Below, one piece after another: positions 15,001 through 38,904 of a stretch of 64,000 nucleotides of DNA (within the stretch, counting starts at the first letter, position 1; each line of letters begins with the position of its first letter). The DNA is from Heterodontus francisci (taxonomy: Eukaryota), in contig NC_090378.1 in assembly GCF_036365525.1 (NCBI RefSeq), forward strand, positions 124,791,593 to 124,855,592. Reading direction: 5' to 3'. The translations under genes and the position numbers were made by a program. The notes beneath the pieces are model-generated. The model had not been told where the DNA came from, searched no databases, and saw nothing but the letters and a program-made list of their open reading frames with translations.

Positions 15001-17477
15001 AACACACAGTCCCACCTCCTGTACTGACATGTCCCACAGTTATATATAATATATAATAATGGACACACAGTCCCACCTCCTGTATTGACACATCCCACAG
15101 TTATATATAATATATAATAATGGACACACAGTCCCACCTCCTGTATTGACACATCCCACAGTTATATATAATATATAATAATGGACAGACAGTCACACCT
15201 CCTGTACTGACACATCCCACACTTACATATAATATATAACAATGAACACACAGTCCCACCTCCTGTACTGACATGTCCCACAGTTATATATAATATATAA
15301 TAATGGACACACAGTCCCACCTCCTGTATTGACACATCCCACAGTTATATATAATATATAATAATGGACAGACAGTCACACCTCCTGTACTGACACATCC
15401 CACACTTACATATAATATATAACAATGAACACACAGTCCCACCTCCTGTACTGACATGTCCCACAGTTGTATATAATATATAATAATGGACACACAGTCC
15501 CACCTCCTGCACTGACATACCCCACAGTGATATATAATCTATAATAATGGACACACAGTCCCACCTCCTGCAATGACATATCCCACAGTTATATATAATA
15601 TATAATAATGGACACACAGTCCCTCTTCCTGTAATGACACATCCCACAGGTATATATAATATATAATAATGGACACACAGTCCCACCTCCTGCACTGACA
15701 CATCCCACAGTTATATATAATATATTATGATGGACAGACAGTCCCACCTCCTGTCATGACATATCCCACAGTTATATATAATATATAATAATGGACACAC
15801 AGTCCCACATCCTTTACTGACACATCCCACAGTTATATATTATATATAATAATGGACACACAGTCCCACCTCCTGCACTGACACATCCCACAGTTATATA
15901 TAATATATCATAATGGACACACAGTCCCACCTCCTGTACTGGCACATCCCACAGTTATATGTAATATATAATAATGGACACACAGTCCCACCTCCTGTAC
16001 TGACACGTCCCACAGTTACATATAATATATAATAATGGACACACAGTCCCACCTCCTGTACTGACACATCCCACAGTTATATATAGTACATTATAATGGA
16101 CTCACAGTCCCACTTCCTGTAATGACACATCCCACAGTTATATATAGTACATTATAATGGACTCACAGTCCCACCTCCTGTACTGACACATCCCACAGTT
16201 ATATATAATATATAATAATGGACTCACAGTCCCACCTCCTGTACTGACACATCCCACAGTTATATATAATATATAATAATGGACACACAGTCCCACCTCC
16301 TCTTCCGACATATCCCACAGTTATATATAATATATAAGAATGGACACACAATCCCACCTCCTGTAATGACACATCCCACAGTTATATATAATATATAATA
16401 ATGGACACACAGTCCCACCTCCTGTATTGACACGTCCCACAGTTATATATAATAAATAATAATGGCCACACAGTCCCACCTCCTGTACTGACACATCCCA
16501 CAGTTATATATAATATATTATAATGGACAGACAATCCCACCTCCTGCACTGACATACCCCACAGTAATATATAATATATAATAATGGACACACAGTCCCA
16601 CTTCCTGTCATGACATATCCCACAGTTATATATAATATATTATAATGGACAGACAATCCCACCTCCTGCACTGACATACCCCACAGTAATATATAATATA
16701 TAATAATGGACACACAGTCCCACTTCCTGTCATGACATATCCCACAGTTATATATAATATATAATAATGGACACACAATCCCACCTCCTGTACTGACACG
16801 TCCCACAGTTATATATAATATATATGAAGGAAACACAGTCCCACCTCCTGTACTGACACATGCCACAGTTATATATAATATATAATAATGGACACACAAT
16901 CCCACCTCCTGTAATGACACGTCCCACAGTTATATATAATATATAATAATGGACACACAGTCCCACCTCCTGCAATGACACATCCCATAGTTATATGTAA
17001 CATATAATATTGGACACACAGTCCCACCTCCTGTACTGACACATCCCACAGTTATATATAATATATAATAATGGACACACAGTCCCACCTCCTGTACTGA
17101 CACATCCCACAGTTATATATAATATATAATAATGGACACACATTCCCACCTCCTGTACTGACACATCCCACAGTTATATGTAACATATAATATTGGACAC
17201 ACAGTCCCACCTCCTGTACTGACACATCCCACAGTTATATATAATATATAATAATGGACACACAGTCCCACCTCCTGTACTGACACATCCCACAGTTATA
17301 TATAATATATAATAATGGACACACATTCCCACTTCCTGTACTGACACATCCCACAGTTATATATAACATATAATATTGGACACACAGTCCCACCTCCTGT
17401 ACTGACACGTCCCACAGTGAAATATAATATATAATAATAGACACACAGTCCGACCTCCTGCACTGACATACCCCACA
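1..17477. repeat. 61-bp tandem satellite (~285 units, continues beyond left edge)
   Basis: Consensus CACAGTTATATATAATATATAATAATGGACACACAGTCCCACCTCCTGTACTGACACATCC repeats head-to-tail from base 1 to an abrupt junction with RTE sequence at ~17477 (cccacag|ggagaacagc). Confidence 0.98.
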
Positions 17478-19810
17478 GGGAGAACAGCATGTCAATGGTC
17501 GATCTCTCTGCATAAAAGCCACACTGTGCCTCAGGGTAGACGCGCTCGGCCAGCTTCTGGAGCCTGTTCAGAGCGACTCGAGCAAAGACTTTCCCCACTA
17601 TGCTGAGCAGGGAGATTCCACGGTAGTTGTTGCAGTCGCCGCGGTCACCTTTGTTTTTATAGAGGGTGATGATATTGGCATCGCGCATGTCCTGGGGTAC
17701 TGCTCCCTCATCCCAGCACAGGCATAGCAGTTCATGTAGTGCTGAGAGTATAGCAGGCTTGGCACTCTTGATTATTTCAGGGGTAATGCTGTCCTTCCCA
17801 GGGGCTTTTCCGCTGGCCAGAGAATCAATGGCATCACTGAGTTCCGATTTGGTTGGCTGTATGTCCAGCTCATCCATGACTGGTGGAGGCTGAGCTGCAT
17901 TGAGGGCAGTCTCAGTGACAGCATTCTCCCTGGAGTACAGTTCTAGGTAGTGCTCAACCCAGCGGTCCATCTGTTTGCGTTGGTCAGTGATTATGTCCCC
18001 CGATTTAGATTTGAGGGGGGCGATCTTCTTGATGGTTGGCCCAAGAGCTCTCTTCATGCCATCATACATTCCTCTGATGTTTCTGGTGTCTGAGGTCAGC
18101 TGAATATGACTGCATAGGTGTTGCCAGTCGTCATTTGCGCAACACCTAGCTGTTCTTTGTGCAGTACTTCTGGCTGCTTTATGTGCTGCGGATGTTAAAT
18201 CGCTGGGGGCTTTCTTGTAGTTCAACAGTGCAATGCGCTTAGCGGCTATGACAGGTTCCAGCTCTTCATTATGAGATTGAAACCAGTCTGCATTTCTCTT
18301 CGCACTTTTGCCGTAGGTGGTCAAAGCTGACTCAGATGGCGTCTCTGATGTGGGCCCACTTGGTCTCAGCATCCCCTGTGGGAGTGTTTTGAAGGGCTGT
18401 TACAAGTGAATTTAGAAATTTTTGTAACAGCTGTGGGTGAGAAATTCTGCGCGGGTGGCCCTTCAGCTTGGAATGATGCAACTTCTTTGGTCTGAATCTA
18501 ACCTTGCTGCACACCAGGGAGTGGTCGGTGTCGCAGTCTGCACTGTGGAAGCTGCGTGTGATTTGAACACTGTTTAAGGCGGCTCGCCTTGTGACAATGA
18601 GGTCTAGCTGGTGCCAACGACGCGATCTTGGGTGCCTCCATGAAACCTGGTGACAGGGTTTAGTGTGAAAGAACGAGTTGGTGATGCAGAGGTTATGATA
18701 GGTACACAACTCAAGCAGTCTCTGCCCGTTCTCATTCATCCTTCCAACGCCATAGCGCCCAAGGCAGGAGGACCATGAGTCATGGTCGGCACCAACCCTG
18801 GCATTGAAGTCCCCCAGCAGGAATAGGTGTTCGGTGTTGGGGATGCTGCTAATGATGTTATGGAGTTGTTCATAGAACTGGTCTTTAGCTTCAGGTGGGG
18901 AGCAGAGTGTTGGAGCATAGATGCTGAGTATGTGTACTGGACCAGAGGTGGTGAGCAGTCGGATGGACAGTATGCGTTCCGAGCCATTTGAGGGAGGCTC
19001 TATCATGCTGAGCCAGGAGTTTCTGATGGCGAAGCCCACTCCATGCTGTCTTGGTTCTTCAGGATCCCTGCCCTGCCAGAAGAAGGTGTAGTCTTGCTCT
19101 GTTAGAGATCCGCTCGCAGGGAGGCGTGTCTCCTGAAGTGCTGCAATGTCCACATTGAATCTACTGAGCTCGTTGTTAATGATGGCGGTCTTCCGAGAAT
19201 CGTTGATTTGTGTAAGGTCTTCCGACAGGCCAGGACACACAGTTCTGACGTTCCAGCTTGCAAAACGAAGGGCTGGTACCTTCTTTCCTTTTTTCATGTT
19301 GTTTGGTGCGGTGTATCAGTCCACCTTTCGGGCAATGACCCTGAGCTCCAAGCACCCATTGAAGCAGGCAGACTGTGGCGGGACAGAACCTTATTGAACT
19401 GGGGCTGCCCGGTTTGAGGCGGGCAGTAGCTGTCCAGTGAGGTGCGATGACCTCTCCCACCGACAAAGGCAACCCGTGGCGCCCAGTTTCTATGCCAATT
19501 TATCTGGACTTATAACCCGTAACTGCTGCCTTCCGTGTTGTGTCAGTCGCTGTGAGGCAACTATGGAGTGACCTCTCCATGGCGCATGCCTGGGCAAGTT
19601 TATGGAGGTTGAGAGTTGCCCAGTCGTCAAAACCCCCCTCTCGGCCTTTCTGGTGGGGTCCAAAGGAGTGCAGGACACGACGTTTGGCACCAGTATGGCT
19701 GCAGGAACTGCCGGAAACATGCCAAAGGTGACACATGACCGCCTACGGGGTTCCGCTCCGGATTATCTGTTAGGGTTTACTCCCTTAGCCTTGGTCTCTC
19801 CTGAGACAGG
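17478..19810 (-). mobile_element. RTE-clade LINE, 5' UTR + APE endonuclease + N-terminal RT, 3'-truncated and frameshifted
   Basis: ORF 18332-19297 has APE motifs (FASWNVRT, DIAALQETRL, LLGDFNARVG, DTDHSLV). ORF 17296-18372 has RT N-terminal motifs (GKAPGKD, NYRGISLLSIVGKVFARV, PEAQCGF, STIDMLFSL) then runs into satellite. The frame shifts near 18335 (gcc atc tga gtc, consistent with a 2-bp deletion). About 500 bp of upstream UTR-like sequence extends to ~19810. Confidence 0.9.
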
Positions 19811-19829
19811 TGTAGGGCCCCTACACAGG

Positions 19830-20060
19830 TGTAGGATGGTGCCGGTGGGAGGAGGGGATGCAAGGGGGAGGGGTAGAGGGAGGGGGTGGGGGGGGGTTGC
19901 AGGGGAAGGGTGTGCGGGGTGAAGATGGTGCGAGGGGGGGGGGCGGGCTGGGACGGGGTTGTGAGGGGGTGAGCTGAGAGGGTGGAGCAGGGAAGGGGAC
20001 GGGGGGGGTGGAAGGGGGGTAAAGGGCGGGGGGGGGGGAAGCTGGTGCAGGTGGGAAGAA
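19830..20060 (+). repeat. G-rich low-complexity tract (G-quadruplex-prone)
   Basis: Many runs of 3-12 G separated by short loops, e.g. GGGGGAGGGGTAGAGGGAGGGGGTGGGGGGGGG. Confidence 0.8.
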
Positions 20061-20249
20061 AGTAAACTGATCAAATTAAACCATGACGTTATGTTCACTA
20101 TCCACTACACCCCCCTGCCCCTGTGGTGCCCACTGCTCATTGAAGGCTTCAGTTGTTCCTCGAACACTCCATGTGCACATATGAAGAGATGCTGAAAATG
20201 TTTTCATCGAATTGGGATTCCAACTCTCCCGAGCACTGCTGCATGCAGC

Positions 20250-20470
20250 TCAGACACAGCGAGACACAGAAACAGTGAGAGGCAGAATGTGAGAGAGATA
20301 CAGATGGAGGGAGAGACAGAATGAGTGAGAGAAGGTGGGAGAGGGACAGGGAGGCATAGAGGCACAGAGACACACACACAGACATTGAGAGAGAGACAGA
20401 CGGAAAGAGACACTCACATCCACACACACACAACGGGAGACACGCAGGCAATGAGAGACAAACACAGACT
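20250..20470. repeat. Degenerate (GA)n/(CA)n microsatellite, left part
   Basis: GAGA/CACA-rich simple sequence; the same type resumes at 22605 after the CR1 insertion. Confidence 0.8.
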
Positions 20471-22604
20471 TTGAAAAAAAATGATAGAATTATAGAATGG
20501 TTACAGCACAGAAGAAGGCCATTCAGGCCATCATTTCTGTGCTGGATCTCTGAAAGAGCAATTCACCTCGTGACACTCCGGCACCTTCTCCCCGTCATCC
20601 TGCACATTCTTCCTTTTAGGAGAATAATCCAATTCCCTTTTGAATGCATCAATTGAACCTGCCTCCACCACACTCTCAGGCAGTGCATTCCAGATCCTAA
20701 CTACTCCCTGTGTGAAAAAGTTTCTCCTCATGTCACCATTGCATCTTTTGCCAATTACCTTAAATCTCTGCCCTCTGGTTCTCGATCCTTCCACCAATGG
20801 TAATAGTTTCTCCCTATCTACTCTGTCCAGAGCCCTAATGATTTTGAATACCCCCATCAAATCTCCTCTCAACCTTCTCATCTCCAAGGAAACAGTCCCA
20901 GCTTCTCCAATTTATCCACATAACTATCCCTGGAATGATTCTTGTGAATCCTTTCTGCACCCTCTCTAATGCCTTCACTTCCTTCCTAAATTGTGGCACC
21001 CAGAACTGGACACAGTCCTCCAGTTGAGGCTGAACTAGTGTTTTATACAAGTTTAACATAACCTCCTTGCTCTTGTACTCTGTGCCCCTATTAATAAAGC
21101 CCAGGATACTGTATGCTTTATTAACCTCTCTCTCAACCTGTCCTGCCACCTTCAATGACTTATGCACATCTGCACTTAGGTCCCTCTGCTCCTGTACCCC
21201 CTTTAGAATTATACCCTTTATTTTATATTGTCTCTCCGCATTCTCTCTACCACATCACACTTCTCTGCATTTAAATTTGATCTGCCACTTGTCAGCCCAT
21301 TCCACCAACCTGTCTGTATCCTTTTGAAGTTCTGCACTGTCTTCCTCACAGTTCACATACTTCCAAGTTTTGTATCATCTGCAAATTTTGAAATTGTGCC
21401 CTGCACACCAAGGTCTAGGTCATTAATATATATTAGGAAAAGCAAGGATCCCAACACTGATCCCTGAGGAACTCCACTACAAACCTTCCTCCAGCCAGAA
21501 AAATATCCATTAACTACTCTCTTTTTCCTGTCACTCAGCCAATTTTGTATCCATGTTGCTATCATCCCTTTTATTCCATGAGCTATAACTTTGCTCACCA
21601 GTCTGTTGTGTGGCACTGTATCAAACACCTTTTGAAAGTCCATGTACACAACATCAACAACATTGTACTCATCAACTCTCTCTGTTACCTCATCAAAAAA
21701 CTCCAGCAAGTTAGTTAAACATGATTTGCCCTGAACAAATCAATGCTGGCTTTCCTTAACTAACTTGCACTTGTCCATGTGACTATTAATCTTGTCCCGA
21801 ATTATTCTTTCTAGAAGTTTCCCCACCACTGATGTTAAACTGACTGGCTTGACATTGCTGGGCTTATCTTTGCACCCTTTTTTGAACAAGGGTGTCACAT
21901 TTACAATTCTCCAATCCTCTGCCACCATCCCTGAGTTTAACGAAGACTGTAAAATTATGGCCAGTGGCTCTGCAATTTCCACTCTCACTCCCTCAGTATC
22001 CTTGGGTGCATCTCATCCGGTCCTGGTGTTTAATCCACTTTAAGTACAGACAGCCTATCCAATAACTCCTCTTTATCAATTTTAAACCCATCTGGTGTCT
22101 GAATTACCTTCTCTTTCACTATGACCTGTGCAGCATCTTCTCGCTTGATAAAGACAGATGGAAAGTATTCATTTCATACCTCAGCCTTGCTCCTACCTCC
22201 ATGTGTAAATCCCCTTTTTGGTCCCTAATCGCCCCAATACACCTTTTACCACCCTTTTACTATATACATGCTGATACAAGATTTCTGGATCCGCTATTGT
22301 ATTGGCTGCCAGTCTCTTTTCATTCTCTCTCTTTTCTTTTTGCTTTTTAAATTTCCCTCTGAGCCTTCTACATTCAGCCTGGCTCTCGGTTGTATAATCC
22401 TCCTGACATTTATCAGAAACACACTTTTTCTTCTTCATCTTAACCCTCTCTTTTGTCATCCAGGGAGCTCTGGATTTGTTTGCCCTGTGTTTCCCCTTCA
22501 TGGAAATACACCTTGGTTTTGCCCGAACTATCTCTGCTTTAAAAGCAGCCCATTGTTCAGTTACAGTTTTCCAATTTATCTGGGTCAGATCCATTCTTAC
22601 CCAA
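20471..22604 (-). mobile_element. CR1 LINE fragment (3' part of ORF2 + 3' tail), decayed
   Basis: Fragmented ORFs 21740-21988 (PEDWR-like ANVTPLFKKG), 21353-21709 ([26 protein letters not shown]), 20835-21167 (LYKTLVQPQLE, ALERVQ), 20531-20887 (RRLRGDL, FFTQGVVRIWNALP), plus a CR1-type 3' tail near 20480. Confidence 0.92.
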
Positions 22605-22859
22605 AGAGAGAGAGAGACACAGGGGCACACACCGGGAAGTAAACACAGAGAGAGACACACACAAATACAGATGGAGAGACAGACACACACAGAGGCACAC
22701 ACCGAGAAGGAAACACAGAGAGAGAGACACACACAAATACAGATGGAGAGACAGACACACACAGAGGCACAACCGGGAAGGAAAGATAGAGAGAGACACA
22801 CACAGTGACAGTGAGAGACAGTGAGAGGGTGAGAGTGAGTGAGTGAAACAGAGAGCAGA
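22605..22859. repeat. Degenerate (GA)n/(CA)n microsatellite with a ~72-bp internal duplication, immediately 5' of the J RSS
   Basis: AAACACAGAGAGAGACACACACAAATACAGATGGAGAGACAGACACACACAGAGGCACA occurs twice, at ~22641 and ~22711. Confidence 0.8.
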
Positions 22860-22898
22860 GGATATTGTACAGCCCCTGCACTGGAAGCTGTCAGTGTG
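22860..22898 (+). promoter_or_regulatory. Recombination signal sequence (23-bp spacer) 5' of IgL J
   Basis: Nonamer GGATATTGT (22860-22868; consensus GGTTTTTGT, 7/9), exactly 23-nt spacer (22869-22891), heptamer CAGTGTG (22892-22898; consensus CACTGTG, 6/7) abutting the J coding end. Confidence 0.88.
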
Positions 22899-22933
22899 GT
22901 TAACGTTCGGTAAAGGAACCAAGCTCAGACTGA
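22899..22933 (+). CDS. IGLJ: Immunoglobulin light-chain J segment (LTFGKGTKLRL), unrearranged
   Basis: G TTA ACG TTC GGT AAA GGA ACC AAG CTC AGA CTG A|GTAAGT: canonical FGxGTKL motif, preceded by a 23-RSS and followed by a consensus phase-1 splice donor at 22934. Confidence 0.95.
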
Positions 22934-23464
22934 GTAAGTAAACCTCAATCCTCCGTTATTAATCCTTTAAATACTGAAACATTCTAAAACACAAATGCTG
23001 AATAGTGGAAGGTGTTCGTCAGGAGCTGCAGTCAATGAAATGGTTCATTGAAGAGCACTGTGTATGACAGGGTGCCCAGCTGTATTTCTTTAGTTACATT
23101 CCCCCTTTAACCAGCAAGATATAAGTAACCAACTTTTACCGAGTGTGTAGAGGAGATCTGGACGTTTGCAGACTGTGGTCACATTCCTGCTCCATGGAGT
23201 GAAATCCCTCACTAGACTCCTGCCAGTCTCAGTGTGAGCTCTGGGTCTCTGTCACAGTCTCTGATATAACTGATCTCAGCACCAGCACAGTGAGACACCG
23301 AGGTCCCACCTTCCCCAGCTTTAACTCTGCTCTGTCCACTCCCTGCTTATCTCTTGTCAAAGTTCTGATGACAAACAGTGACAGCAGGGCTCCCAATCCA
23401 GTGGCTTCAGTGTCCCAGGGTTTTGGGGAGACTCTCAGTTGCTTTGTCTTTGGGTGAAGTTCAG

Positions 23465-23670
23465 GCCAATATTTATCTCTGAACCGACATTGCTAAAAAT
23501 GCTCATTTACCTCATTGCTGTTTGTGGGATCTTGCTGTGCACAAATTGTCTGCCACATTTCCTACATTCCAACAGTGACTGCTCTTTAAACAAGTCCTTC
23601 ATTGTCTGTAAATGACTTTGGGAGGTCCTGAGGTGTGAAATACTCGATATAAATACAAGTCTTTCTTTTA
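23465..23670 (+). mobile_element. SINE fragment (3' half; same family as 24080-24432, DeuSINE/SacSINE1-like)
   Basis: Shares GGCCAATATTTATC...TGTGGGATCTTGCTGTGC...CTTTGGGA.GTCCTGAGGTGT...ATAAATACAAGTC with the copy at 24080-24432/27241-27267. Family name is from recall. Confidence 0.6.
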
Positions 23671-24079
23671 TTTTTATTAACCGGGAGCTCCCACAATACC
23701 CTGTTGATTAAAGCTGAACCCAGCAGAAAATCCACAGAAAACTGACTAATGTTTGTCTGATTTGTCTGTGTGTTTATTAGACATGACTGAGCAGATAGCA
23801 AGAGTTTCAGCAGCAACAAAGGTGTTACTCTAGTGCCCCTCCCACTTTCCCCATCGACTTACAAAATACTTACGGGGAAAGGGCTCAGCACCTGCCATCG
23901 ACTGGTTAAATGTCACCCCTCTAGACTACAGGTCTCCCGCAATCTGCTCTCCATCTCTCTCCTGAAGGCACTATCTCTGGCTGGGGCACAGCTCCACCCT
24001 CCCCAAGTGGCCTCATTCCTCCAAGTGTGAGCCGGGAGGTTGAGAATGGCAGGCTATTCGACTGTGAGGTTTTAGTGTT

Positions 24080-24432
24080 GCCTCAGTGGGTAGCACTCTC
24101 ACCTCTGAGTCAGAATGTCGTGGCTTCAGGTCCCACTCCAGAGACTGGAGCACATAATCCAGGCTGACACTGCAGTGCAGTATTGAGGGAGTGCTGCACT
24201 GTCAGAGGTGCTGTCTTTCAGATGAGACAAACTGACGTCTGCCCTCTCAGGTGGATGTAAAGGATCCCACTGCGCTATTAGAAGAGCAGGGGAATTCTCC
24301 TCGGTGTTCTGGACAATGTTTATCACTCAACCAACATCATTGAAAATCAGATTATCTGCTCATTATCACTCTGCACGGTGGGATCTTGCTGTGCATAATT
24401 GGCCATAAAACACTTTGGGACATCCTGAGGTG
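24080..24432 (+). mobile_element. tRNA-derived SINE (DeuSINE/SacSINE1-like); tail displaced to 27241-27267 by a LINE insertion
   Basis: tRNA-like head GCCTCAGTGGGTAGCACTCTC...TTCAGGTCCCACTCCAG and body CAGTGCAGTATTGAGGGAGTGCTGCACTG. It ends at CATCCTGAGGTG, and the expected continuation (..AGGCACTATAGAAATGCAAGTC) is at 27241. Confidence 0.65.
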
Positions 24433-27240
24433 TTTTTTTTTTCTCGTTATTTTTTATTCATTCATGGGATGTGGCCGTCGCTGGCCAGGCCAGCATTTAT
24501 TGACCATCCCTAATTGCCCTTGGGAAGGTGGTGGTGAGCTGCCTTCTTGAACCGCTGCAGTCCATTTGGGGTTTGGTAAACCCACAGTGCTGTTAGGAAG
24601 GGAGTTCCAGGATTTTGACCCAGCGACAGTGAAGGAACGGCGATATAGTTCCAGGTCAGGATGGTGTGTGACTTGGAGGGGAACTTGCAGGTGGTCGTGT
24701 TCCCATGTATGTGCTGCCCTTGTCCTTCTAGTTGGTAGAGGTCGCAGGTTTCGAAGGTGCTGTCTAAGGAGCCTTGGTGCGTTGCTGCAGTGCATCTTGT
24801 AGATGGTACACACTGCTGCCAATGGACGTCAGTGGTGGAGGGAGTGAATGTTTGTGGATGGGGTGCCAATCAAGCAGGCTGCTTTGTCCGAGATGGTGTT
24901 GAGCTTCTTGAGTGTTGTTGGAGCTGTACCCATCCAGGCAAATGGAGAGTATTCCATCACACTCCTGACTTGTGCCTTGTAGATGGTGGGCAGGCTTTGG
25001 GGAGTCAGGAGGTGAGTTACTCGCCTCAGCATTCCTAGCCTCTGACCTGCTCTTGTAGCCATGGTATTTATATGGCTACTCCAGTTCAGTTTCTGGTCAA
25101 TGGTAACCACTAGGATGTTGATAGTGGGGGATACAGCAATGGTAATGCTGTTGAATGTCAAGGGGAGATGGTTAGATTCTCTCTTGTTGGAGATGGTCAT
25201 TGCCTGGCACTTATGTGGCATGTCTTACTAATTTGATTGAGTTTTTTGAGGAAGTGATGAAGATGATTGATGAGGGAAGGGCAGTGGATGTTGTCTATAT
25301 GGACTTCAGTAAAGCCTTTGACAAGGTCCCACATGGCAGACTGGTGCAAAAGGTGAAGTCACACGGGATCAGAGGTGAGCTGGCAAGATGGACACAGAAC
25401 TGGCTCGATCATAGAAGACAGAGGGTAACAGTGGATGGGTGTTTTTCTGAATGGAGGGATGTGACTAGTGGTGTTCCGCAGGGATCAGTGCTGGGACCTT
25501 TGCTGTTTGTAGTATATATAAATGATTTGGAGGAAAATGTAGCTGGTCTGATTAGTAAGTTTGCGGACGACACAAAGGTTGGTGGAGTTGCGGATAATGA
25601 TGAGGACTGTCAGAGGATACAGCAAGATTTAGATCGGTTGGAGACTTGGGTGGAGAAATGGCAGATGGAGTTTAATCCGGACAAATGTGAGGTAATGCAT
25701 TTTAGAACGTCTAATGCAGGTGGGAGGTATACAGTAAATGGCAGAACCCTTAGGAGTATTGACAGTCAGAGAGATCTGGGCGTACAGGTCCACAGGTCAC
25801 TGAAAGTGGCAACGCCCATCGATAAGGTAGTCAAGAAGGCATACGGCATGCTTGCCTTCATCGGTCAGGGCATAGAGTATAAAAATTGGCAAGTCATGCT
25901 GCAGCTGATCAGAACCTTAGTTAGGCCACACTTAGAATATTGCGTACAATTCTGGTCGCCACACTACCAGAAGGACGTGGAGGCTTTGGAGAGGGTACAG
26001 AGGAAGCTTACCAGGATGTTGCCTGGTCTGGAGGGCATTAGCTATGAGGAGAGGTTGGAAAAACTCAGATTGTTTTCACTGGAACGATGGAGGTGGAGGG
26101 GCGACATGATAGAGGTTTACAAAGCTAAGAGTGGCATGGACAGAGTGGATAGTCAGAAGCTTTTTCCCAGGGTGAAAGAGTCAGTTACTAGGGGACATAG
26201 ATTTAAGATGCGAGGGGCAAAGTTTAGAGGGGATGTGCGAGGCAGGTTTTTTACACAGAGGGTGGTGAATGCCTGGAACTTGCTGCCAGGAGAGGTAGTG
26301 GAAGCAGATACGATAGCGACGTTTAAGAGACATCTTGACAAATACATGAATAGGGAGGGAATAGAGGGATATGGGCCTCAGAAGTGCAGAAGGTGTTAGT
26401 TTAGGCAGGCATCAAGATCGCGCTTGGCTTGGAGGGCTGAATGGCCTGTTCCTGTGCTGTACTGTTCTTTGTTCTTTGTTGTTTGTTCGAATGTTACTTG
26501 CCACTTATTAGCCCAAGCCTGGATATTGTCCAGGTCTCGCTGCATTTCTACACGGACTGCTTCAGTATCTCAGGAGTCACGAATGGTGCTGAACATTGTG
26601 CAATTATCCGCGAACATCCCCACTTCTGGCCTTATGATTGAAGGAAGGTCATTGATGAAGCAGCTGAAGATGGTTGGGCCTAGGACACTACCCTGAGGAA
26701 CTCCAGCAGTGATGTCCTGGAGCTCAGATGATTGACCTCCAACAACCACAACCATCTTCCTTTGTGCTCGGTATGACTCCAGCCAGTGGAGGGTTTTCCC
26801 TCTGATTCCCATTGACTCCAGTTTTGCTAGGGCTCCTTGATGCCATATTCGGTCAAATGCTGCCTTGCTGTCAAAGGCAGTCACTCTCACCTCACCTCTT
26901 GAGTTCAGCCCTTTTGTCCATGTTTGAACCAAGGCTGTAATGAGGTCAGGAGCTGAGTGGCCCTGGCGGAACCCAAACTGAGCGTCACTGAGCAGGTTAT
27001 TGCTAAGCAAGTGCCGCTTGATGGCACTGTTTATGACACCTTCCATCACTTTACTGATGATAGAGAGTAGACTGATGGGGTGGTAATTGGCCGGGTTGGA
27101 TTAGTCCTGCTTTTTGTGTACAGGACATACCTGGGCAATTTTCCACATTGCAGGGTAGATGCCAGTGTTGTAGCTGTACTGGAACAGCTTGGCAAGTGGC
27201 GTGGCAAGTTCTGGAGCACAGGTCTTCAGTACTATTGCCG
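24433..27240 (-). mobile_element. CR1/L2-group non-LTR retrotransposon (RT and 3' end), 5'-truncated, split by a CR1 at 25221-26487
   Basis: ORFs 26570-27049 ([33 protein letters not shown]) and 24829-25221 (TIDQKLNW, TIYKAQVRSVMEYS), with a T-rich tail at 24433. The two halves join seamlessly (..TGTGGCA | CGAATGTTAC..). Confidence 0.88.
25221..26487 (+). mobile_element. CR1 LINE, 5'-truncated, with an uninterrupted ~390-codon RT C-terminal ORF
   Basis: ORF 25200-26399: [72 protein letters not shown]. 3' tail GGGCTGAATGGCCTGTTCCTGTGCTGTAC + (TGTTCTT)n. Confidence 0.95.
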
Positions 27241-27267
27241 GTAACAGGCACTATAGAAATGCAAGTC

Positions 27268-28189
27268 ATTCTTTGAGGTTGGAGGCTCCTGATCCTGACC
27301 CTCGCCAATTGTCCGCATACTCTCACCTTCCAGGGGTCATTGGATCATTCGGAGCAGTGACCCTGCCTGACCCCAGTCCACTGAGACTAATTATAGCCTC
27401 ACCCTTGACCTCACCCCAGTGCTGGGCAGGAAGGTTTTTAATGAAATCTAGAACGTTCTACACTGCCACCCAACATGAATCCTTTCTGAAGTGTGTTGAT
27501 AAGTGAGACCCCCACTATCAACAGCGTAGGGGCTACCATTGACCAGAAACTGAACCGGAGTAGCCATATAAATACCGTGGCTACAAGAGCAGGTCAGAGG
27601 CTAGGAATCCTGAAGCAATTAACTCACCTCATGACTTCCCAAAGCCTGTCCACCATCTACAAAGCACAAGTCAGGATTGTGATGGAATGCTGTCTACTTG
27701 CCTGGATGGGTGCATCTCCAACAACACTCAAGAAGCTCGACACCATCCAGGACAAAGCAGCCCGCTTGATTGACACCCCATCCACAAACATTCACTCCCT
27801 CTACCACCGACGTACATTGGCAGCAGTGTGTACCATCTACAAGATGCACTGCAGCAACGCACCAAGACACCTTAGACAGCACCTTCCAAACCCGCGACCT
27901 CTACCAACTAGAAGGATAAGGGCAGCAAATACATGGGAACACCACCATCTGCAAGTTCCCCTCCAAGTCACACACCATCCTGACTTGGAACTATATCGCC
28001 GTTCTTTCACTGTCGCTGGGCCAAAATCCTGGAACTCCCTTCCTAACAGCACTGTGGGTATACCTACCTCAAATGGACTGCAGCGGTTCAAGAAGGCAGC
28101 TCACCACCACCTTCTCAAAGGGCAATTAGGGATGGGCAATAAATGCTGGCCTAGCCAGTGACAATTTATCCCATGAATAAATTTTAAAA
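27268..28189 (+). mobile_element. Second copy of the CR1/L2-group LINE 3' end (27500-28189) with ~230 bp of unrelated 5' sequence, flanked by an 11-bp direct repeat
   Basis: ORF 27493-28161 matches the minus-strand ORFs at 24454-25221. AAATGCAAGTC occurs at 27257-27267 and 28190-28200. Confidence 0.85.
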
Positions 28190-30486
28190 AAATGCAAGTC
28201 TGCTCCAGTGTTCTCGGAGAAAGTTCTCCGGATGTGTGTGTGATCTGAGATTTGTTAACACTGAGCCTGTTTCCTCCAGATAGACTGATCTATAGTTCGA
28301 GCTTCCTGTCAGGTTAACAGTGTCTTAAAGGGACACTGAGTCTTTAAACACTCTTACTATTAACCATTTCAGTGCTGAATTGGTGATTAACCTTCATTAG
28401 AGACGTTTAAACAGAGAAATATAGAAAGATTTGTGGTGCAGATGAGGCCATTCGGCCCATGGTGTCCATGCCAGCTGAAAATGAGCTAACCAGCCTAATC
28501 CCACTTTCCAGTTCTTATTCCTGCAAGTTTCAGCACCTCAAGTGCATATCCAAGTGTTTTTTAAATGTAATGAGTGTTTCTGCCTCTACCACCCTTTCAG
28601 GCAGTGAGTTCCAGACCCCCAACACCCTCTGGGTGAAAAAAGTACTCCTCAAATCACCTCTCATCCTTCCACCAATTAATTTAAATCTATGCCGCTGGGT
28701 TATTGACCTCTCTGCTGCGGGAAATAGGTCCTTCCTATCCACTCTATCTAGGCCCCTCATAATTTTATACACCTCAATTAAATCTTCCCCTCAGTCACCT
28801 CCGTTCCAAAGATAACAAGCCCAGCCATTCCAATCTTTCCTCATTGCTAAAGTTTTCCATTCCTGGCAACATCCTCGTAAATCTCCTCTGTACCCCCTCT
28901 TGTTTGATCACATCCTTCCTGTAATGTGGTGACCAGCACTGTACACAGTTTTCTAGCTGTGGACTAACTAGTGTTTTATACAACTCTGAGGAATCTCTTT
29001 GTTCTTATACTCTAGGCATCAGCCAGTAAGGGCAAGTATCCCATATGCCTTCTTAACCACCTCATCTAGCAGTCCTGCTACCTCAGAGATCTGTGGACAG
29101 GTACTCCAAGGTCCCTCAGTTCCTCTACACTTCTCAGTATCCTAGCATTTATTGTATATTGCTTTGCCTTGTTTGTCCTCCCCAAATGCATTACCTCACA
29201 TTTCTCCACATTAAATTCCATTCTCCATTTTCTGCCCACCTGACCAGTCTACAGCTCTCCTCCTCACAGATAACCACAAGGCCAATGTTTGTATCATCTG
29301 CAAACATCTTAATCATCAGTCTAAATCATTGATATATATTATAAACAGCAGGGAACCCAGTAATGAACCCTGCAGAACCCCACTGAAAACAGCCTTCCAC
29401 TAACAATAACAGCCATTGACAATAAACCTTTGCTTCCTGTCACTAAGTCAATTTTGGATCCAATTTCCCATGGATCCCATGGGCTTTTAATTTTCTGACC
29501 AATCTGCCATGTGGGATCTTATCAAAGGCCTTGCTAAAATCCATGTAGACTATATCAAACATGCTGCCCTCATTGACACTCCTTGTAACCTCTTCTAGAA
29601 ATGTAATCGTTAGTCAGACACAAACTTCCCTTAACAAATCCATGCTGACTGTCCTGAATTAATCCCGTGTTTCTCTAAATGATGGTTTTTACTGTCTCTC
29701 AGAACTTTTTCCAATAATTTTCCCACTGCCGAGGTTATGCTGACTGATCTGTAATTACTTGGTCCATCCATTCTTTCCTTTTTAAACAACAGTACAACAT
29801 TAGCAGTCCTCCAGTCCTCAGGTACCATGCCTTTAACCAGAGAGAATTGGAAAATGAGGATCAGAGCCTCCGCTATTTCTTCCATTGCTTCCTTTGCAGC
29901 CTGGGATATATTTCACCTGGGCCTGGTGATTTATCCATTTTCAAGGATGTGAAACACCTTAATATTTCCTCCCTCACTAAGTTTATCCCATCCAAGATTT
30001 CACACTCCTCCTCCTTAACTACAATGTCTGCTTTGTCACTCTCTGTGAAAAAAGGCACAAAGTATTCATTCAGAAACATGTCCATATCCTCCGCCTCCAC
30101 ACACAGGTTAGGTTTTTGGACTCTAATTGTCGCTGTTCTTTCCTTCGTAATCCTCTTGCTCTTTATGTATTTATTAAACATCTTTGGATTTTCCTTGATT
30201 TTATTTGCCAATATTTTTTCATGTCCTCTCTTTGCTTCCCTAATTTCCTTTTCAATTTCATTGCTGAACTTTCTCTACTCTTCTAGGCTTTCTGCAGTTT
30301 CTCAGTATCCGATATAAGTTTCCCATTTGTCCCTTATCCTACTGCGTATGCTCTTTGACATCCGGGGGAAATCGAGATTTGGGAGTCCCACCGTTTTTCT
30401 ATTTGAGAACTATTTGTTCTGAGGCCTCACTATCTCCTGCTTCAATGCCTCCCACTGCTCTCACACTGATTTACCTCCAGGCTACT

Positions 30487-30865
30487 GGGGAAGTGGTGGC
30501 GTAGTGGTAATATCACTGGACTCGTACTTAAGAACCCAAACTAATGCTTTAGGGACACAGCTTTGAACCCCACCACGTCAGATGAAAACATTAGAATGCA
30601 ATTAATAAACATCTGGAATTAAAAGCTCATCTGATGGTGACCATGAAACCATTGTCAATCATTGTAAAAACCCATCTGGTTCACTAATGTCCTTTCGGGA
30701 AGGAAATCTGCTGTCCTTACCTGGTCTGGCCTACATGTGACTCCAGACCAACAGCAATCTGGTTGACCCTTAAAATGCCCCTCAGTTCAAGGACAATTAG
30801 GGATGAACAATAAATGCTGGCCTAGCCAGCGATACCCACATCCCATGAGCAACTTAAAAAAAATT
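30487..30865 (+). mobile_element. tRNA-headed SINE whose 3' tail matches the CR1/L2-group LINE
   Basis: Head GTGGTGGCGTAGTGGTAAT...TTTGAACCCCACCA (A/B-box-like); tail CAATTAGGGATGAACAATAAATGCTGGCCTAGCCAGCG..CCACATCCCATGA plus A-run; second copy on the minus strand at 48263-48660. Confidence 0.75.
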
Positions 30866-31299
30866 AACAAAAAGCTGTTTCCAGTCTAATTCTGACAAAT
30901 CACATCTCAGCTTAGTAAAATTGGCCTTTCCCCAGTTTAAAACTTTTACTCTTGGTCCATCTTTAACCTTTTCTATAACTGCTCTAAATCTAACTGAATT
31001 ATAATCACTGCCACTAAAACACTCTCACATTGATCCCCTTCCACCTGCCCAGATTCATTCCTGAAAACTAAGTCCAGAACTGTATCTTCTCTTGTTGGTC
31101 TTTCTACTGATGAGAAAAGTTCTCCCGAATGTATTTTAGGAATTCTGCGCCCTCTGCACCTTTTATACTGAATTTATCCCAGTTAATATTTGGAAAGTTG
31201 AAATCCCCTCCTATTACTGGCCTGTTGTTTCTGCACTTTTCAGTAATTTGCCGACACATTTGCTCTTCTCTCTCCCTCTGACTGTTTGAGGGTCTATAG

Positions 31300-31950
31300 C
31301 AGGAGTCTGGAACCTGCGGCTCCGGAGACACATGTGACTCTTTAACAGCTCATTTACAGCTGCCAACCTTTTCCAGTTGGATCACATTAACATGAAAAAG
31401 GCCGAAAAAATTCAGTCAAGGAAAGTAAACTGTGTTTTTATTGTGGGGATAAAAGGCTAATCATTATGTTGTACTTTATAGTTTCAAATGATTATTTAAA
31501 TGAAAAGCATCATCATTGTCTAAATGAACTTGTTTGAGTGGTACAGCTTCCATTGGAGGAACAGCTTTTATGTTTGTGACCATTATTGTTTCTAATATCA
31601 CTGAGATGATAAATTATTCTGCTATTACAAACTTCTTTTTTATTACGAGAATCAATAGCTGCAAAAATTGTCTTAATTCTGCAGTTAAAGTTGGGTTTTA
31701 AGATGACTTTACTGACAAAATTATATTTTTAAAAAATCAAAAAAACACAATAATTCAGAGTGAAACCTATTCTGATTTTGACTTTTTTTCTTTTGATACA
31801 TAAATTCAATACATGTATTTTATTTATTATATATACAAAGTGTGCATTCTACCAGAGACACTTGTCAATTTAGAAGGTATTTGGTTTAGAAATGCTGAAT
31901 TTTGGTCTTGACGCTCCCAGTAGTTTTTATTTTAGGTAATATTTTTGAAA
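31300..31950. mobile_element. hAT-like non-autonomous DNA transposon (MITE) relic, AT-rich
   Basis: Starts CAGGAGTCTGGAACCTGCGGCTCCGGAGACACATGTGACTCTTT, resembling hAT/Charlie-type termini from recall, and interrupts otherwise collinear CR1 endonuclease sequence. The right TIR is not identifiable. Confidence 0.45.
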
Positions 31951-32303
31951 AAGGTCTCTTCCTTTTTTATCCCCCTCTCTATCCCATCTGAAAACCCAGT
32001 ATCAGGATCATTGAGCTGCCATTCCTGCCCTTCTTTAAGCCATGTTTCAGTAATTCCTACGATATCATACTTCCAAGAGCAGTCCAACATAATTTAACCA
32101 TCAGAACATCAAACCACCCAGTGTCATCGTATTTTAGACTAAACTTAGCAAGTGAGGCAAAAAAGAAGCAAATTAAGAATCAGTGATGCTCATTTCTAAT
32201 GATTCAACACCAGCCGTAGTTCATCAACCCAGCTGTCTGTTATCTGATGTGACATATCCAAACACGGAAACACCTACAGAAACATACGCATAAATATACA
32301 CAT

Positions 32304-32444
32304 TTTATCTGCAGCACCCGTGGAAGAGTCTGTCACTCTAGAATTGGCCTTTATAGCCACTCCAGGTGCTGCTGCACAAACCACTGACCACCTCCAGGCG
32401 CTTACCCATTGTCTCTCGAGACAAGGAGGCCAAAGAAGAAGAAG
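32304..32444 (+). mobile_element. Very short 5'-truncated RTE LINE 3' end with (GAA)n tail and 11-bp TSD
   Basis: Encodes ICSTRGRVCHSRIGLYSHSRCC (RTE C-terminal Cys/His motif), ends GGCCAAAGAAGAAGAAG, and is flanked by AATATACACAT at 32293-32303 and 32445-32455. Confidence 0.85.
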
Positions 32445-32925
32445 AATATACACATAGAACACACAAATATACACACAGAACACATAATTATACACACAGA
32501 ACACACAAATATATGCAGAGAACACACAAATATATACAGAGAACACACCAATATACACACTGAACACACAAATATATACAGAGAATACACAAACATATAC
32601 AGAGACTATGCAAATATATACAGGACATACAAATATAGAGACAGAACACACAAATATACAGAGAGAACACACCAATAACGGAACATAGAAATATACAGAG
32701 AGAACACACCAATATACACACAGAACACACAAATATACAGAGAGAACACACCACTATACACATAGAACACACAAATATACTAAGAGAACACACAAATATA
32801 CACAAAGAACACACAAATACACATGAAGAACACACAAGTATACATAGAGAATGCCTAAATGTACACAGGGAACACAAAAATATATACCTAGAACACATAA
32901 ATACACACAAAACACACAAACATGC
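32445..32925. repeat. Degenerate ~20-24-bp minisatellite (AGAACACACAAATATACACAG) just upstream of the C-exon acceptor
   Basis: About 21 imperfect tandem units ending ~30 bp before the splice acceptor. Confidence 0.85.
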
Positions 32926-32956
32926 AGTGATTAACAGTCTTTCTCTTCTCTTTCAG

Positions 32957-33285
32957 GCCGAGAGAAGTCTCAGCCCACACTGACCCTGCTGCCCCCCTCC
33001 CTCGAGCAGGTCAAGGCCAAGGGCACTGCCACCCTGGTATGCCTTGTCAATCACTTCTATCCCGATGAAGTGGGGGTGGAGTGGAAGAAGGATGGTGCAG
33101 CCATTTCAGCCGGGGTTCAGACCAGCAACTACCTGCGAGCTTCGGACAGCACCTACAGTGTCAGCAGCCTGCTGACCCTCTCTGGGTCCGAATGGGAGTC
33201 CAACGCCCGCTTCTCCTGTGCCCTCACCCACGAGACCCTCTCCTCTCCCCTCAGTAAGAGTGTCAGCAGATCAGAATGTGTGTAG
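32957..33285 (+). CDS. IGLC: Immunoglobulin light-chain constant exon (C1-set), intact; probably elasmobranch type I / NS5 / sigma-cart isotype
   Basis: Polypyrimidine tract + TTTCAG acceptor (32956), phase-1 join to J gives S-REKSQPTLTLLPPSLEQVKAKGTATLVCLVNHFYPDEVGVEWKKDGAAISAGVQTSNYLRASDSTYSVSSLLTLSGSEWESNARFSCALTHETLSSPLSKSVSRSECV*. Both domain Cys (33040, 33217), the core Trp, FYP, YSVSSLLTL and the penultimate inter-chain Cys (33277) are present. Isotype is from recalled similarity to horn shark type I chains plus the J-23 RSS. Confidence 0.96.
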
Positions 33286-33441
33286 AGTGTTAGAGACAGT
33301 CCGCAGAGGAGACACAACTTTAAATATAACAGGGGTGAACTGGGAGGATAAAGGTCATTGTCAGCACGGAATTTCAACTCTCTTCCTTCTCGTGACTGGG
33401 TCTGAGACACTTCTGAGGATCAGGGGTTAAGGCACGAAATT

Positions 33442-34870
33442 GGGACAGTGTAGAGGGAGCTTTACTCTGCATCTAACCCGTACTGTACCTGCCCTGGGAG
33501 TGTTTAATGGGGACAGTGTAGAGGGATCTTTACTCTGTATCTAACCCGTACTGTACCTGCCCTGGGAGTGTTTGATGTGGACAGTGTAGAGGCAGCTTTA
33601 CTCTGTATCTAACCCGTACTGTACCTGCCCTGGGAGTGTTTAATGGGGACAGTGTAGAGGGATCTTTACTCTGTATCTAACCCGTACTGTACCTGCCCTG
33701 GGAGTGTTTGATGTGGACAGTGTAGAGGCAGCTTTACTCTGTATCTAACCCGTACTGTACCTGCCCTGGGAGTGTTTGATTGGACAGTGTAGAGGGAGCT
33801 TTACTCTGTATCTAACCCGTACTGTACCTGCCCTGGGAGTGTTTGATTGGACAGTGTAGAGGGAGCTTTACTCTGTATCTAACCCGTACTGTACCTGCCC
33901 TGGGAGTGTTTGATTGGACAGTGTAGAGGGAGCTTTACTCTGTATCTAACCCGTACTGTACCTGCCCTGGGAGTGTTTGATTGGACAGTGTAGAGGGAGC
34001 TTTACTCTGTATCTAACCCGTACTGTACCTGCCCTGGGAGTGTTTGATTGGACAGTGCAGAGGGAGCTTTACTCTGTATCTAACCCCGTACTGTACCTGC
34101 CCTGGGAGTGTTTGATTGGACAGTGTAGAGGGAGCTTTACTCTGTATCTAACCCGTACTGTACCTGCCCTGGGAGTGTTTGATTGGACAACGTAGAGGGA
34201 GCTTTACTCTGTATCTAACCCGTACTGTACCTGCCCTGGGAGTGTTTAATGGGGACAGTGTAGAGGGATCTTTACTCTGTATCTAACCCGTACTGTACCT
34301 GCCCTGGGAGTGTTTGATGTGGACAGTGTAGAGGCAGCTTTACTCTGTATCTAACCCGTACTGTACCTGCCCTGGGAGTGTTTAATGGGGACAGTGTAGA
34401 GGGATCTTTACTCTGTATGTAACCCGTACTGTACCTGCCCTGGGAGTGTTTGATGTGGACAGTGTAGAGGCAGCTTTACTCTGTATCTAACCCGTACTGT
34501 ACCTGCCCTGGGAGTGTTTGATTGGACAGTGTAGAGGGAGCTTTACTCTGTATCTAACCCGTACTGTACCTGCCCTGGGAGTGTTTGATTGGACAGTCAG
34601 AGGGAGCTTTACTCTGTATCTAACCCGTACTGTACCTGCCCTGGGAGTGTTTGATTGGACAGTCAGAGGGAGCTTTACTCTGTATCTAACCCGTACTGTA
34701 CCTGCCCTGGGAGTGTTTGATTGGACAACGTAGAGGGAGCTTTACTCTGTATCTAACCCCGTACTGTACCTGCCCTGGGAGTGTTTGATTGGACAACGTA
34801 GAGGGTGCTTTACTCTGTATCTAACCCGTACTGTACCTGCCCTGGGAGTGTTTGATTGGACAATGTAGAC
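33442..34870. repeat. 59-60-bp minisatellite (~24 units) between the IgL stop codon and the first poly(A) signal
   Basis: Unit GGACAGTGTAGAGGGAGCTTTACTCTGTATCTAACCCGTACTGTACCTGCCCTGGGAGTGTTTGATT, highly homogeneous. Confidence 0.97.
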
Positions 34871-35157
34871 TCGTGATGCCAAGTAAAACCTCACTAAGAT
34901 GCTGAAGACTGTCAGCTGAGCTAAAATAATGTGAACCTCAGAAGTCGCCGCTCAGTAAACCAGACCTCCTTCCTGCTCACTCTGCAGTTACAATTTAAAG
35001 TTTAGTCTCTGTTTAAAGCGACAGGATTCTGATGTTATTGAGAAAATCTCCACAACTGTTTTAATAAACCTTCATTCCCCCTGTGAACTTCTCCAGCTTC
35101 CTCTCGCTGGGCTCTTTATTCAAGTCTTTTCTCTGTAAATGTAAATCTGTAAAAGGT

Positions 35158-38753: not shown

Positions 38754-38904
38754 CAAGACAGAGATGTAAAAGAAACTGTCGGCGTGTTGGGCGAAACTCT
38801 GATGATGGAAACATGGGGGAGATTGGGAACAGGGGCTTTGAAAGTCGCCAAAAGGCAGTTTTAATTCCAAATCTCTTGGGTTGACAGGATGGTATGAACT
38901 TGTT

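What the first reader, a model, noticed from the sequence alone, without database searches (positions are those of the whole stretch)
17478..33285. V-less (orphan) immunoglobulin light-chain J-C unit with intact coding and splice signals
Seen: one unrearranged J with a 23-RSS, perfect donor and acceptor, and a stop-free C exon retaining every structural residue including the Cys that bonds to heavy chain. I find no V exon, leader or 12-RSS in 22.8 kb upstream, only CR1, microsatellite, RTE and satellite. Established: cartilaginous-fish IgL genes are V-J-C miniclusters in which V lies close to J or is germline-joined. Inference, three options: (a) V was pushed >22 kb away by repeat expansion, giving an unusually long V-J interval; (b) V was deleted, leaving a young pseudogene or a J-C acceptor for inter-cluster rearrangement; (c) the unit is expressed as a J-C chain, the architecture of the mammalian surrogate light chain lambda5, which I am not aware has been described in sharks.
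Basis: partly seen in the sequence, partly recalled or inferred. Interest (0 to 1): 0.8.

Follow-up and report, generated by a model that had tools for sequence, protein, structure and literature searches.

The report
Kappa J-C half, V off-window
This is the intact J segment and constant exon of a shark antibody kappa light-chain gene whose V segment is not in the window, most likely because a giant tandem repeat that fills the V-J gap runs off the window's left edge, not because V is missing.

Summary
The window has one germline J with a 23-RSS (22860-22898), J coding at 22899-22933 with a GTAAGT donor, a 10,023-nt intron full of retroelements, and an intact C1-set exon (32957-33285). No V, leader or credible 12-RSS exists anywhere in the 64 kb on either strand.

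The class is kappa (type III/NS4), not type I/NS5. The best hits are Heterodontus francisci kappa chains at 94% and 90% identity.

The "orphan" reading is not supported. The first 17.5 kb of the window is a 61-bp satellite with co-oriented heptamer-like motifs, and it runs off the left edge. This scan has already noted, on other DNA of the same chromosome piece, at least ten kappa V genes followed 2-6 bp after their 12-RSS by 15-52 kb of a 61-base satellite. In one followed-up case J lay 51 kb away. I could not see that V.

The C exon is under purifying selection (dN/dS 0.19). Against full function, letters specific to this copy are rare or absent in two RNA-type runs where the family is very deep, so the copy is weakly used at best. 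A V-less remnant stays possible (about 0.25). A lambda5-like chain is unlikely.

The parts
4..17478 (+). 61-bp satellite, about 286 units, running off the left edge of the window; presumed filler of the V-J interval
   Evidence: TRF: period 61, 286.9 copies, 90% matches. CACAGT occurs 448 times on + and 0 times on -. CACAGTT occurs in 217 places. Ten units pass as weak 23-RSS look-alikes.
17479..19297 (-). Non-LTR retrotransposon fragment (endonuclease plus the start of RT), cut off inside RT at the satellite edge
   Evidence: Pfam Exo_endo_phos 3.1e-12 and RVT_1 4.4e-05, below Pfam's own cut-off. The satellite ends at 17478 with no remnant beyond it.
20531..21988 (-). Further retroelement RT fragments between the satellite and J
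   Evidence: ORFs; RVT_1 6.9e-15 for 21353-21709.
22193..22859 (.). GA/CA-rich simple and 72-bp repeats directly upstream of the J RSS
   Evidence: TRF row 22605-22804; ORF translations rich in CVSLSL; sequence read.
22860..22898 (+). J-side 23-RSS: nonamer GGATATTGT, 23-nt spacer, heptamer CAGTGTG
   Evidence: The translated spacer and heptamer (PLHWKLSVW) are identical to those read through in the H. francisci gene model P0026.
22899..22933 (+). J-kappa coding segment (..LTFGKGTKLRL plus the first base of a Ser codon)
   Evidence: 20 of 22 residues match P0026 positions 119-140.
22934..32956 (+). J-C intron, 10,023 nt, donor GTAAGT, acceptor ..ctctttcAG; holds several RT fragments and a 21-bp repeat (32445-32920)
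   Evidence: RVT_1 1.6e-23 for 25200-26399 and 1.4e-21 for 26570-27049.
32957..33285 (+). C-kappa exon, 108 full codons plus a split Ser codon, stop TAG
   Evidence: C1-set 1.6e-23. 94.4% identity to H. francisci XP_067894067.1/P0004 and 89.8% to cDNA P0017. dN/dS 0.19.
33286..33442 (+). Start of the 3' UTR, shared at 95% or more with the highly expressed kappa family
   Evidence: Family depth above 1e6 in X1 and X2 across 33227-33428. No AATAAA on + before 35063.
33443..34869 (+). 68-bp tandem array (21 copies, 96% alike) inside or just after the 3' UTR
   Evidence: Its unit is abundant in all four runs, also where kappa is shallow, so it is a dispersed repeat (bin 33429-33500).

Best explanation
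The region is the J-C half of an ordinary, rearranging Ig kappa (type III/NS4) V-J-C cluster of a horn-shark-type genome. Its V segment with a 12-RSS most likely lies to the left of the window, at the far end of the 61-bp satellite that fills the first 17.5 kb. Shown here: the J, its 23-RSS, the splice sites and the C exon are intact. The C exon has evolved under purifying selection. The window holds no V. The satellite runs off the edge. Inferred: V is there, and RAG joins the V 12-RSS to this J 23-RSS by deletion, cutting out the satellite and the retroelement fragments (more than 22.8 kb). The V promoter would then drive a VJ-intron-C transcript spliced at 22933/32957. The copy appears to be little used in the RNA-type runs examined. 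That would fit a weak nonamer, a long interval or a defective V.
For: (1) J, RSS, donor, acceptor and C exon are intact. (2) Isotype is kappa: 94.4% to H. francisci kappa model P0004/P0026 and 89.8% to cDNA P0017. A 23-RSS on J is the kappa arrangement (recalled). (3) The translated J-RSS spacer and heptamer are identical to those of a V-bearing H. francisci model, P0026. (4) The satellite at 4-17478 has period 61, runs off the left edge, and has heptamer-like CACAGT 448 times on + and 0 times on -. (5) Scan notes on the same chromosome piece report intact kappa V genes followed 2-6 bp after the 12-RSS by 15-52 kb of a 61-base, RSS-like, co-oriented satellite: s1-872197, 873563, 872822, 871829, 872058, 873564, 872057, 874325. 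(6) dN/dS is 0.19 against the P0004-type C, with 6 nonsynonymous and 10 synonymous changes, binomial p=0.0016. Five of the six replaced residues are states seen in the kappa sequences of other sharks or of unnamed sources in the alignment. (7) An exact 80-nt contig at 32957-33036 carries the copy's letters at 32989, 33002, 33003 and 33007. It starts exactly at the acceptor with 13 unmatched letters before it, as a spliced RNA would, at depth 163 (X1). A 62-nt exact contig has depth 83 (X2).
Against: Identity of the satellite with the V-J filler rests on period and motif description, not on an alignment; the look-up by sequence was blank. Copy-specific letters are rare or missing in X1/X2: the window's A at 33039 has depth 0 of 216,538 (X1) and 0 of 216,767 (X2). 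No contig carries the window's own T-C-A at 33047-33049. A at 33108 has about 224 of 408,502. The contig with the window's G33186/A33192 (Glu78 codon) has depth 31-36, against 0.6-0.9 million for the family nearby. The exact spliced piece may come from a paralog that shares that stretch. The retroelement at 17479 is cut on its 3' (RT) side by the satellite edge, so a rearrangement happened at that border. The nonamer has two mismatches in its A-tract.
Confidence: 0.65

Rival explanations
1. V-less remnant: the cluster lost its V, or V is crippled. The J-C is a young, still intact relic that is not rearranged, or only rarely through joins with another cluster's V.
For: No V in 64 kb. Copy-specific letters are absent or at no more than about 0.1% of family depth in two RNA-type runs. 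An intron-exon contig (32914-32983, 2 differences, depth 81) and intron contigs (depth 22-33) have about the same depth as the copy-specific exon contigs (31-163), as unspliced or sterile RNA would give. A broken retroelement at the satellite border shows a past rearrangement.
Against: The satellite upstream is the kind that, per scan notes, starts right behind an intact V. There are no stops or frameshifts. dN/dS is 0.19. RSS and splice sites are kept. Contigs drop rare variants and the RNA donor may differ from the genome donor, so holes prove little (tool's own caveat). Intron contigs lie on retroelement sequence and may come from elsewhere.
Confidence: 0.25
2. The J-C unit is expressed by itself as an invariant J-C chain, analogous to the mammalian surrogate light-chain component lambda5.
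For: J and C are intact, and a cryptic acceptor (..ttgtacAG|CCC) sits at the nonamer-spacer border. Gene models of paralogs read through that same stretch (P0026). A spliced contig starts at the C acceptor.
Against: The J reading frame has two stops within 31 codons upstream of the J motif and no Met. No leader exon was found. The RSS is retained. The unit is kappa, not lambda. Reviews state that no lambda5/VpreB is known in fish and that promoters sit at V segments only (PMC5192425 and PMC9614664, passages). Expression of the copy is at most trace.
Confidence: 0.03
3. Assembly artefact: the satellite and the J-C region were joined wrongly, so the apparent neighbourhood is not real.
For: Satellites of tens of kb are hard to assemble. 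The junction at 17478/17479 cuts a retroelement.
Against: The same satellite-beside-J arrangement is noted in other windows (s1-874060, s1-872190). There are no N runs in the window.
Confidence: 0.04

Closest known systems
Shark Ig kappa (type III / NS4) V-J-C miniclusters, e.g. nurse shark NS4 split genes (Lee et al. 2000, PMC2193156; passages read)
   Same: One J with an RSS, one C exon, a kappa-type C sequence, the FGKGTKLRL J motif, and a phase-1 J-C splice. High similarity to H. francisci kappa chains.
   Different: Published split NS4 genes have a V-J spacer of about 500 bp (502-524 bp). Here no V lies within 22.8 kb upstream, and 17.5 kb or more of that is satellite. The J-C intron is 10 kb and loaded with retroelements.
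Satellite-swollen kappa clusters noted earlier by this scan in the same genome (s1-872190, s1-872913, s1-872058 and others)
   Same: A 61-bp satellite with co-oriented heptamer-like motifs next to kappa gene segments on the same chromosome piece.
   Different: Most of those windows show the V end, and two are noted to show both ends (one of them followed up). This window shows only the J-C end, with an extra 5.4 kb of retroelement and simple repeat between the satellite and J. Sameness of the satellite was judged by description only.
Mammalian lambda5 (IGLL1), the J-C-like part of the surrogate light chain
   Same: J-like plus C-like coding parts without a V.
   Different: lambda5 has its own leader and unique exon and no RSS (recalled), is lambda-related (PMC9614664), and is reported to have arisen in eutherians (PMC9614664, passages). 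Here the RSS is intact, the isotype is kappa and no leader is seen.

Membership tests
Cartilaginous-fish Ig kappa (type III/NS4) cluster | C1-set constant exon of kappa type with the C-terminal Cys | tested here: met
   Pfam C1-set 1.6e-23. 94.4% to H. francisci 'immunoglobulin kappa light chain-like' and 85% to the nurse shark chain P0010. SEC-V end.
Cartilaginous-fish Ig kappa (type III/NS4) cluster | Germline J with FGXG motif, RSS with 23-nt spacer, and splice donor | tested here: met
Cartilaginous-fish Ig kappa (type III/NS4) cluster | Leader-V exon with 12-RSS upstream of J in the same cluster | tested here: inconclusive
   None in the 64-kb window, but the upstream satellite runs off the window edge. 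The sequence to the left could not be read (closed).
Cartilaginous-fish Ig kappa (type III/NS4) cluster | Expressed as rearranged VJ spliced to C | tested here: inconclusive
   The family is very deep in X1/X2. An exact contig starts at the acceptor with 13 unmatched letters (depth 163/83), but other copy-specific letters are absent or at depth 31-36. The runs are contigs and their RNA status is a guess.
lambda5/IGLL1-like surrogate light chain | Own leader and unique N-terminal exon giving an open frame into the J-like part, with no RSS | tested here: not met
   The RSS is retained. There are stops and no Met in the J frame upstream. A far upstream spliced leader was not excluded.
lambda5/IGLL1-like surrogate light chain | Lambda-related J-C and a VpreB partner | tested here: not met
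   The sequence is kappa. VpreB was not searched for. Reviews report none in fish.
Decayed pseudogene | Stops, frameshifts, lost signals, or neutral substitution pattern | tested here: not met
   Open exon, intact signals. dN/dS 0.19, p=0.0016. A very young pseudogene cannot be told apart.

The most novel reading that the evidence does not exclude
The J-C unit really has no V of its own, yet is kept intact by selection. It would then serve as an acceptor for V segments of neighbouring kappa clusters (joins between clusters across satellites), or give J-C transcripts with a role of their own. In a bolder version, the co-oriented heptamer-like satellite units themselves engage RAG and set how often this J is used.
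Probability: 0.07. Interest if true: 0.75.

Novelty: new variant of a known kind. Interest (0 to 1): 0.3.

Why it matters
As an orphan J-C gene it would bear on how sharks test heavy chains without a surrogate light chain. The evidence points instead to a window-edge effect. What remains of interest is the architecture. Published split shark kappa genes have V and J about 0.5 kb apart, whereas here at least 22.8 kb, mostly a 61-bp satellite with heptamer-like motifs, precedes J. This adds the J-side view to a pattern the scan has already noted at the V side of many kappa clusters in this genome. If this copy's low share in RNA holds up, these clusters offer a natural test of whether V-J distance, or a satellite full of RSS-like heptamers, lowers recombination frequency.

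Tried and rejected

I looked for notes on the neighbouring window and for other J-C-only notes: nothing.

I looked for a protein model carrying this exact C. There is none among the hits (3 of 14 candidates passed, length range 59-189 aa) or (24 of 69 passed, 82-260 aa). Longer models were not searched.

Type I/NS5 as the class: rejected, since all strong hits are kappa.

Long-decayed pseudogene: rejected on dN/dS.

Literature searches found nothing in the held library on satellites in shark V-J intervals (1 paper, unrelated), on horn shark genome Ig loci (2 papers, unrelated by their listings) or on orphan shark IgL units (12 of 131 listed, none on this). Subscription papers (Rast 1994, Fleurant 2004, Iacoangeli 2017; recalled) were not seen. 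Supplements were not opened.

I did not test assembly contiguity or DNA runs. I did not lay reads on the J region.
Full report
What is there. The window has no N. An FGKGT motif in a J-like setting lies at 22906-22920. Reading the DNA gives these parts:
- nonamer GGATATTGT at 22860-22868
- a 23-nt spacer at 22869-22891
- heptamer CAGTGTG at 22892-22898
- J coding at 22899-22933 (LTFGKGTKLRL plus one base)
- donor GTAAGT at 22934-22939

A scan for heptamer, 11-13 or 22-24 nt spacer and nonamer, with at most 1, 2 and 3 (total) mismatches, found this as the only hit oriented like a J-side RSS: it was the 1 hit on the minus strand. The 12 hits on the plus strand are 10 weak 23-spacer look-alikes inside the satellite and 2 hits inside simple repeats.

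The C exon follows a pyrimidine tract and AG at 32955-32956. It runs from 32957 to 33285 in phase 1 and ends in TAG. It scores as Pfam C1-set at E=1.6e-23 and keeps both domain cysteines, the tryptophan and the C-terminal SEC-V. The split codon A+GC gives Ser, as in the H. francisci chains (..KLRLSREKSQPT..). The J-C intron is 10,023 nt. I did not build or search a joined J+C model; the two exons were handled apart.

Which light chain. The C exon alone found 3 proteins among 14 candidates. A second search with the C domain of P0001, allowing lengths of 82-260 aa, gave 24 of 69 candidates, nearly all named 'immunoglobulin kappa light chain-like' from sharks. By BLASTP the window's C is 94.4% identical (6 of 108 residues differ) to H. 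francisci XP_067894067.1 (P0004) and to its cluster mate XP_067894095.1 (P0026). It is 89.8% identical to the H. francisci cDNA product WKK30311.1 (P0017) and 77-89% identical over the full C domain to the 18 other full-length matches, shark kappa chains and unnamed fragments (74-89% in four partial matches). So the unit is kappa, also called type III or NS4 (naming from PMC5192425, passages), not type I/NS5. The genome is horn shark or a very near relative; this rests on those identities and on earlier scan notes, since no tool named the window's source.

No V in the window. tblastn with 25 proteins hit only J and C, apart from chance rows with E above 1e-6 on repeats. The same held for P0026. 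A profile HMM built from 20 kappa V domains, run with all filters off against 1585 six-frame pieces, gave a best E of 1.

What lies upstream. Positions 4-17478 are one 61-bp satellite with 286.9 copies at 90% matches, and it begins at the window's first bases. Its CACAGT motifs are all on the plus strand: 448 against 0. No piece of it recurs right of 17478. From 17479 to 19297 a non-LTR retroelement lies on the minus strand (Exo_endo_phos 3.1e-12; RVT_1 4.4e-05, below Pfam's cut-off). Its RT is cut off at the satellite edge, which is the 3' side of the element, so that border was remodelled after the insertion. More RT fragments follow at 20.5-22.0 kb, and GA/CA-rich repeats run from 22193 up to the nonamer. 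The intron holds further RT fragments.

Why 'orphan' is probably a window effect. Earlier notes of this scan, on the same chromosome piece 0.3 to 6.4 Mb before this window, describe at least ten intact kappa V genes. Their 12-RSS is followed after 2-6 bp by 15-52 kb of a 61-base satellite with co-oriented, RSS-like heptamers. What I tested is that my satellite fits them in period, orientation and motif, and that it leaves the window on the side where V should be. I could not align the satellites (blank), nor read leftward (closed).

Published split NS4 genes of the nurse shark have V-J spacers of 502-524 bp (PMC2193156, passages). So 22.8 kb without V looks alarming by the textbook, but not by this genome's own standard.

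Is the unit healthy? The 512-nt contig of run X3 (and the 771-nt contig of X19) differs from the window at 16 exon sites and 3 UTR sites, and it encodes exactly the P0004-type residues. Of the 16 exon differences, 6 are nonsynonymous steps and 10 synonymous. With 243 nonsynonymous and 81 synonymous sites, dN is 0.025, dS is 0.135 and dN/dS is 0.19. The binomial p for so few nonsynonymous changes is 0.0016. This measures the whole path between two paralogs or orthologs, so a recent loss of function would not show.

Five of the six replaced residues (Leu11, Leu15, Gln17, Val30, Asn31) occur in kappa sequences of other sharks or of unnamed sources in the alignment. The block SLEQVKAK..CLVNHFYP is shared with Chiloscyllium P0022. 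Only Glu78 is private to this copy.

RNA-type evidence. The look-up of sequencing runs listed 22 runs, none on record as RNA; the best shares were 0.60 and 0.48 (X1 and X2, one sample). I laid X1, X2, X3 and X19 on 30500-33500. All four are Logan contigs, so depth is only a rough figure. In X1 and X2 summed depth is 0.25-1.8 million over the exon and UTR and 0-70 over most of the intron. That marks them as RNA and shows the kappa family is very highly expressed.

For this copy:
- An exact contig at 32957-33036 carries the window's letters at 32989, 33002, 33003 and 33007. It begins at the acceptor with 13 unmatched letters, at depth 163 (X1).
- An exact 62-nt contig has depth 83 (X2).
- Contigs with the window's G33186/A33192 have depth 31 (X1) and 36 (X2).

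Against this copy:
- At 33039 the window's A has depth 0 of 216,538 (X1) and 0 of 216,767 (X2).
- At 33047-33049 no contig has the window's three letters.
- At 33108 the window's A has about 224 of 408,502 (X1).
- At 33339 the window's A has about 8,594 of 1,018,034 (X1).
- A contig across the intron-exon border (32914-32983, 2 differences) has depth 81. Intron contigs, partly on retroelement sequence, have depth 22-33.

So this exact copy is at most a trace component (about 0.1% or less) of kappa RNA in these runs, and the exact pieces could come from paralogs that share them. The tool warns that contigs drop rare variants and that holes prove nothing, and the RNA donor may not be the genome donor. 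I treat this as a modest point for a weakly used or unused cluster.

Weighing the readings.
- Main reading (0.65): the J-C half of a satellite-swollen kappa cluster, with V off-window.
- V-less or V-crippled remnant (0.25).
- lambda5-like chain (0.03). The RSS is kept. The J frame has two stops and no Met in the 31 codons before the motif. The isotype is kappa. Reviews report no lambda5/VpreB in fish and promoters only at V (PMC5192425 and PMC9614664, passages).
- Misassembly (0.04, untested).

Novelty and score. The unit is a member of a known gene family. Its architecture departs from the published 0.5-kb V-J spacing: at least 22.8 kb without V, mostly satellite, and a 10-kb intron. I found nothing on that in the held library (listings and passages only, subscription papers and supplements unseen). 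The scan has already reported the pattern from the V side on other DNA of this genome. This window adds a J-side example and a hint of low usage. Interest 0.3.

Noticed in passing
window 4-17478: Every CACAGT in the 61-bp satellite is on the plus strand (448 against 0), and 217 places read CACAGTT followed by an A/T-rich stretch. That is the orientation of a V-side RSS heptamer. Ten units pass a loose 23-RSS scan.
   Followed up: partly
window 17478/17479: A minus-strand LINE fragment is cut on its 3' (RT) side exactly where the satellite ends. This is the opposite of the usual 5' truncation (recalled), so the satellite border was remodelled after the insertion.
   Followed up: partly
window 32986-33051 (C exon codons 10-31): The N-terminal third of the C domain carries SLEQVKAK..CLVNHFYP, shared with a divergent Chiloscyllium kappa-like protein (P0022). 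The rest of the exon and the 3' UTR are close to the main horn shark type, with 3 differences in 183 UTR bases against 16 in 329 exon bases. This may be a mosaic from gene conversion, or a minor C-kappa subtype.
   Followed up: partly
window 33443-34869: A young 68-bp tandem array (21 copies, 96% alike) starts 157 nt after the stop codon. The first plus-strand AATAAA after the stop is at 35063, so this copy's 3' UTR may be stretched by about 1.4 kb. The unit is abundant in all four runs, also where kappa is shallow.
   Followed up: partly
window 38904-46997 and 49707-63972: Two more large satellites lie downstream of the C exon: 26-bp units (313 copies) and 45-bp units (more than 300 copies, running to the right edge). 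The J-C island is flanked by satellites on both sides.
   Followed up: no
proteins P0001 and P0002: Two shark kappa light-chain fragments (rearranged V-J-C, cDNA-like) are filed in public databases under Aeromonas veronii and Salmonella enterica. They are presumably contamination of bacterial assemblies.
   Followed up: no
protein P0026 against window 22873-22938: The RefSeq model XP_067894095.1 reads from the V end straight into the translated J-RSS spacer and heptamer (..TDTPLHWKLSVWFTFGKG..). It therefore describes a germline, unrearranged splice form using a cryptic acceptor at the nonamer-spacer border, not a real light chain. The same acceptor sequence is present in this window.
   Followed up: partly
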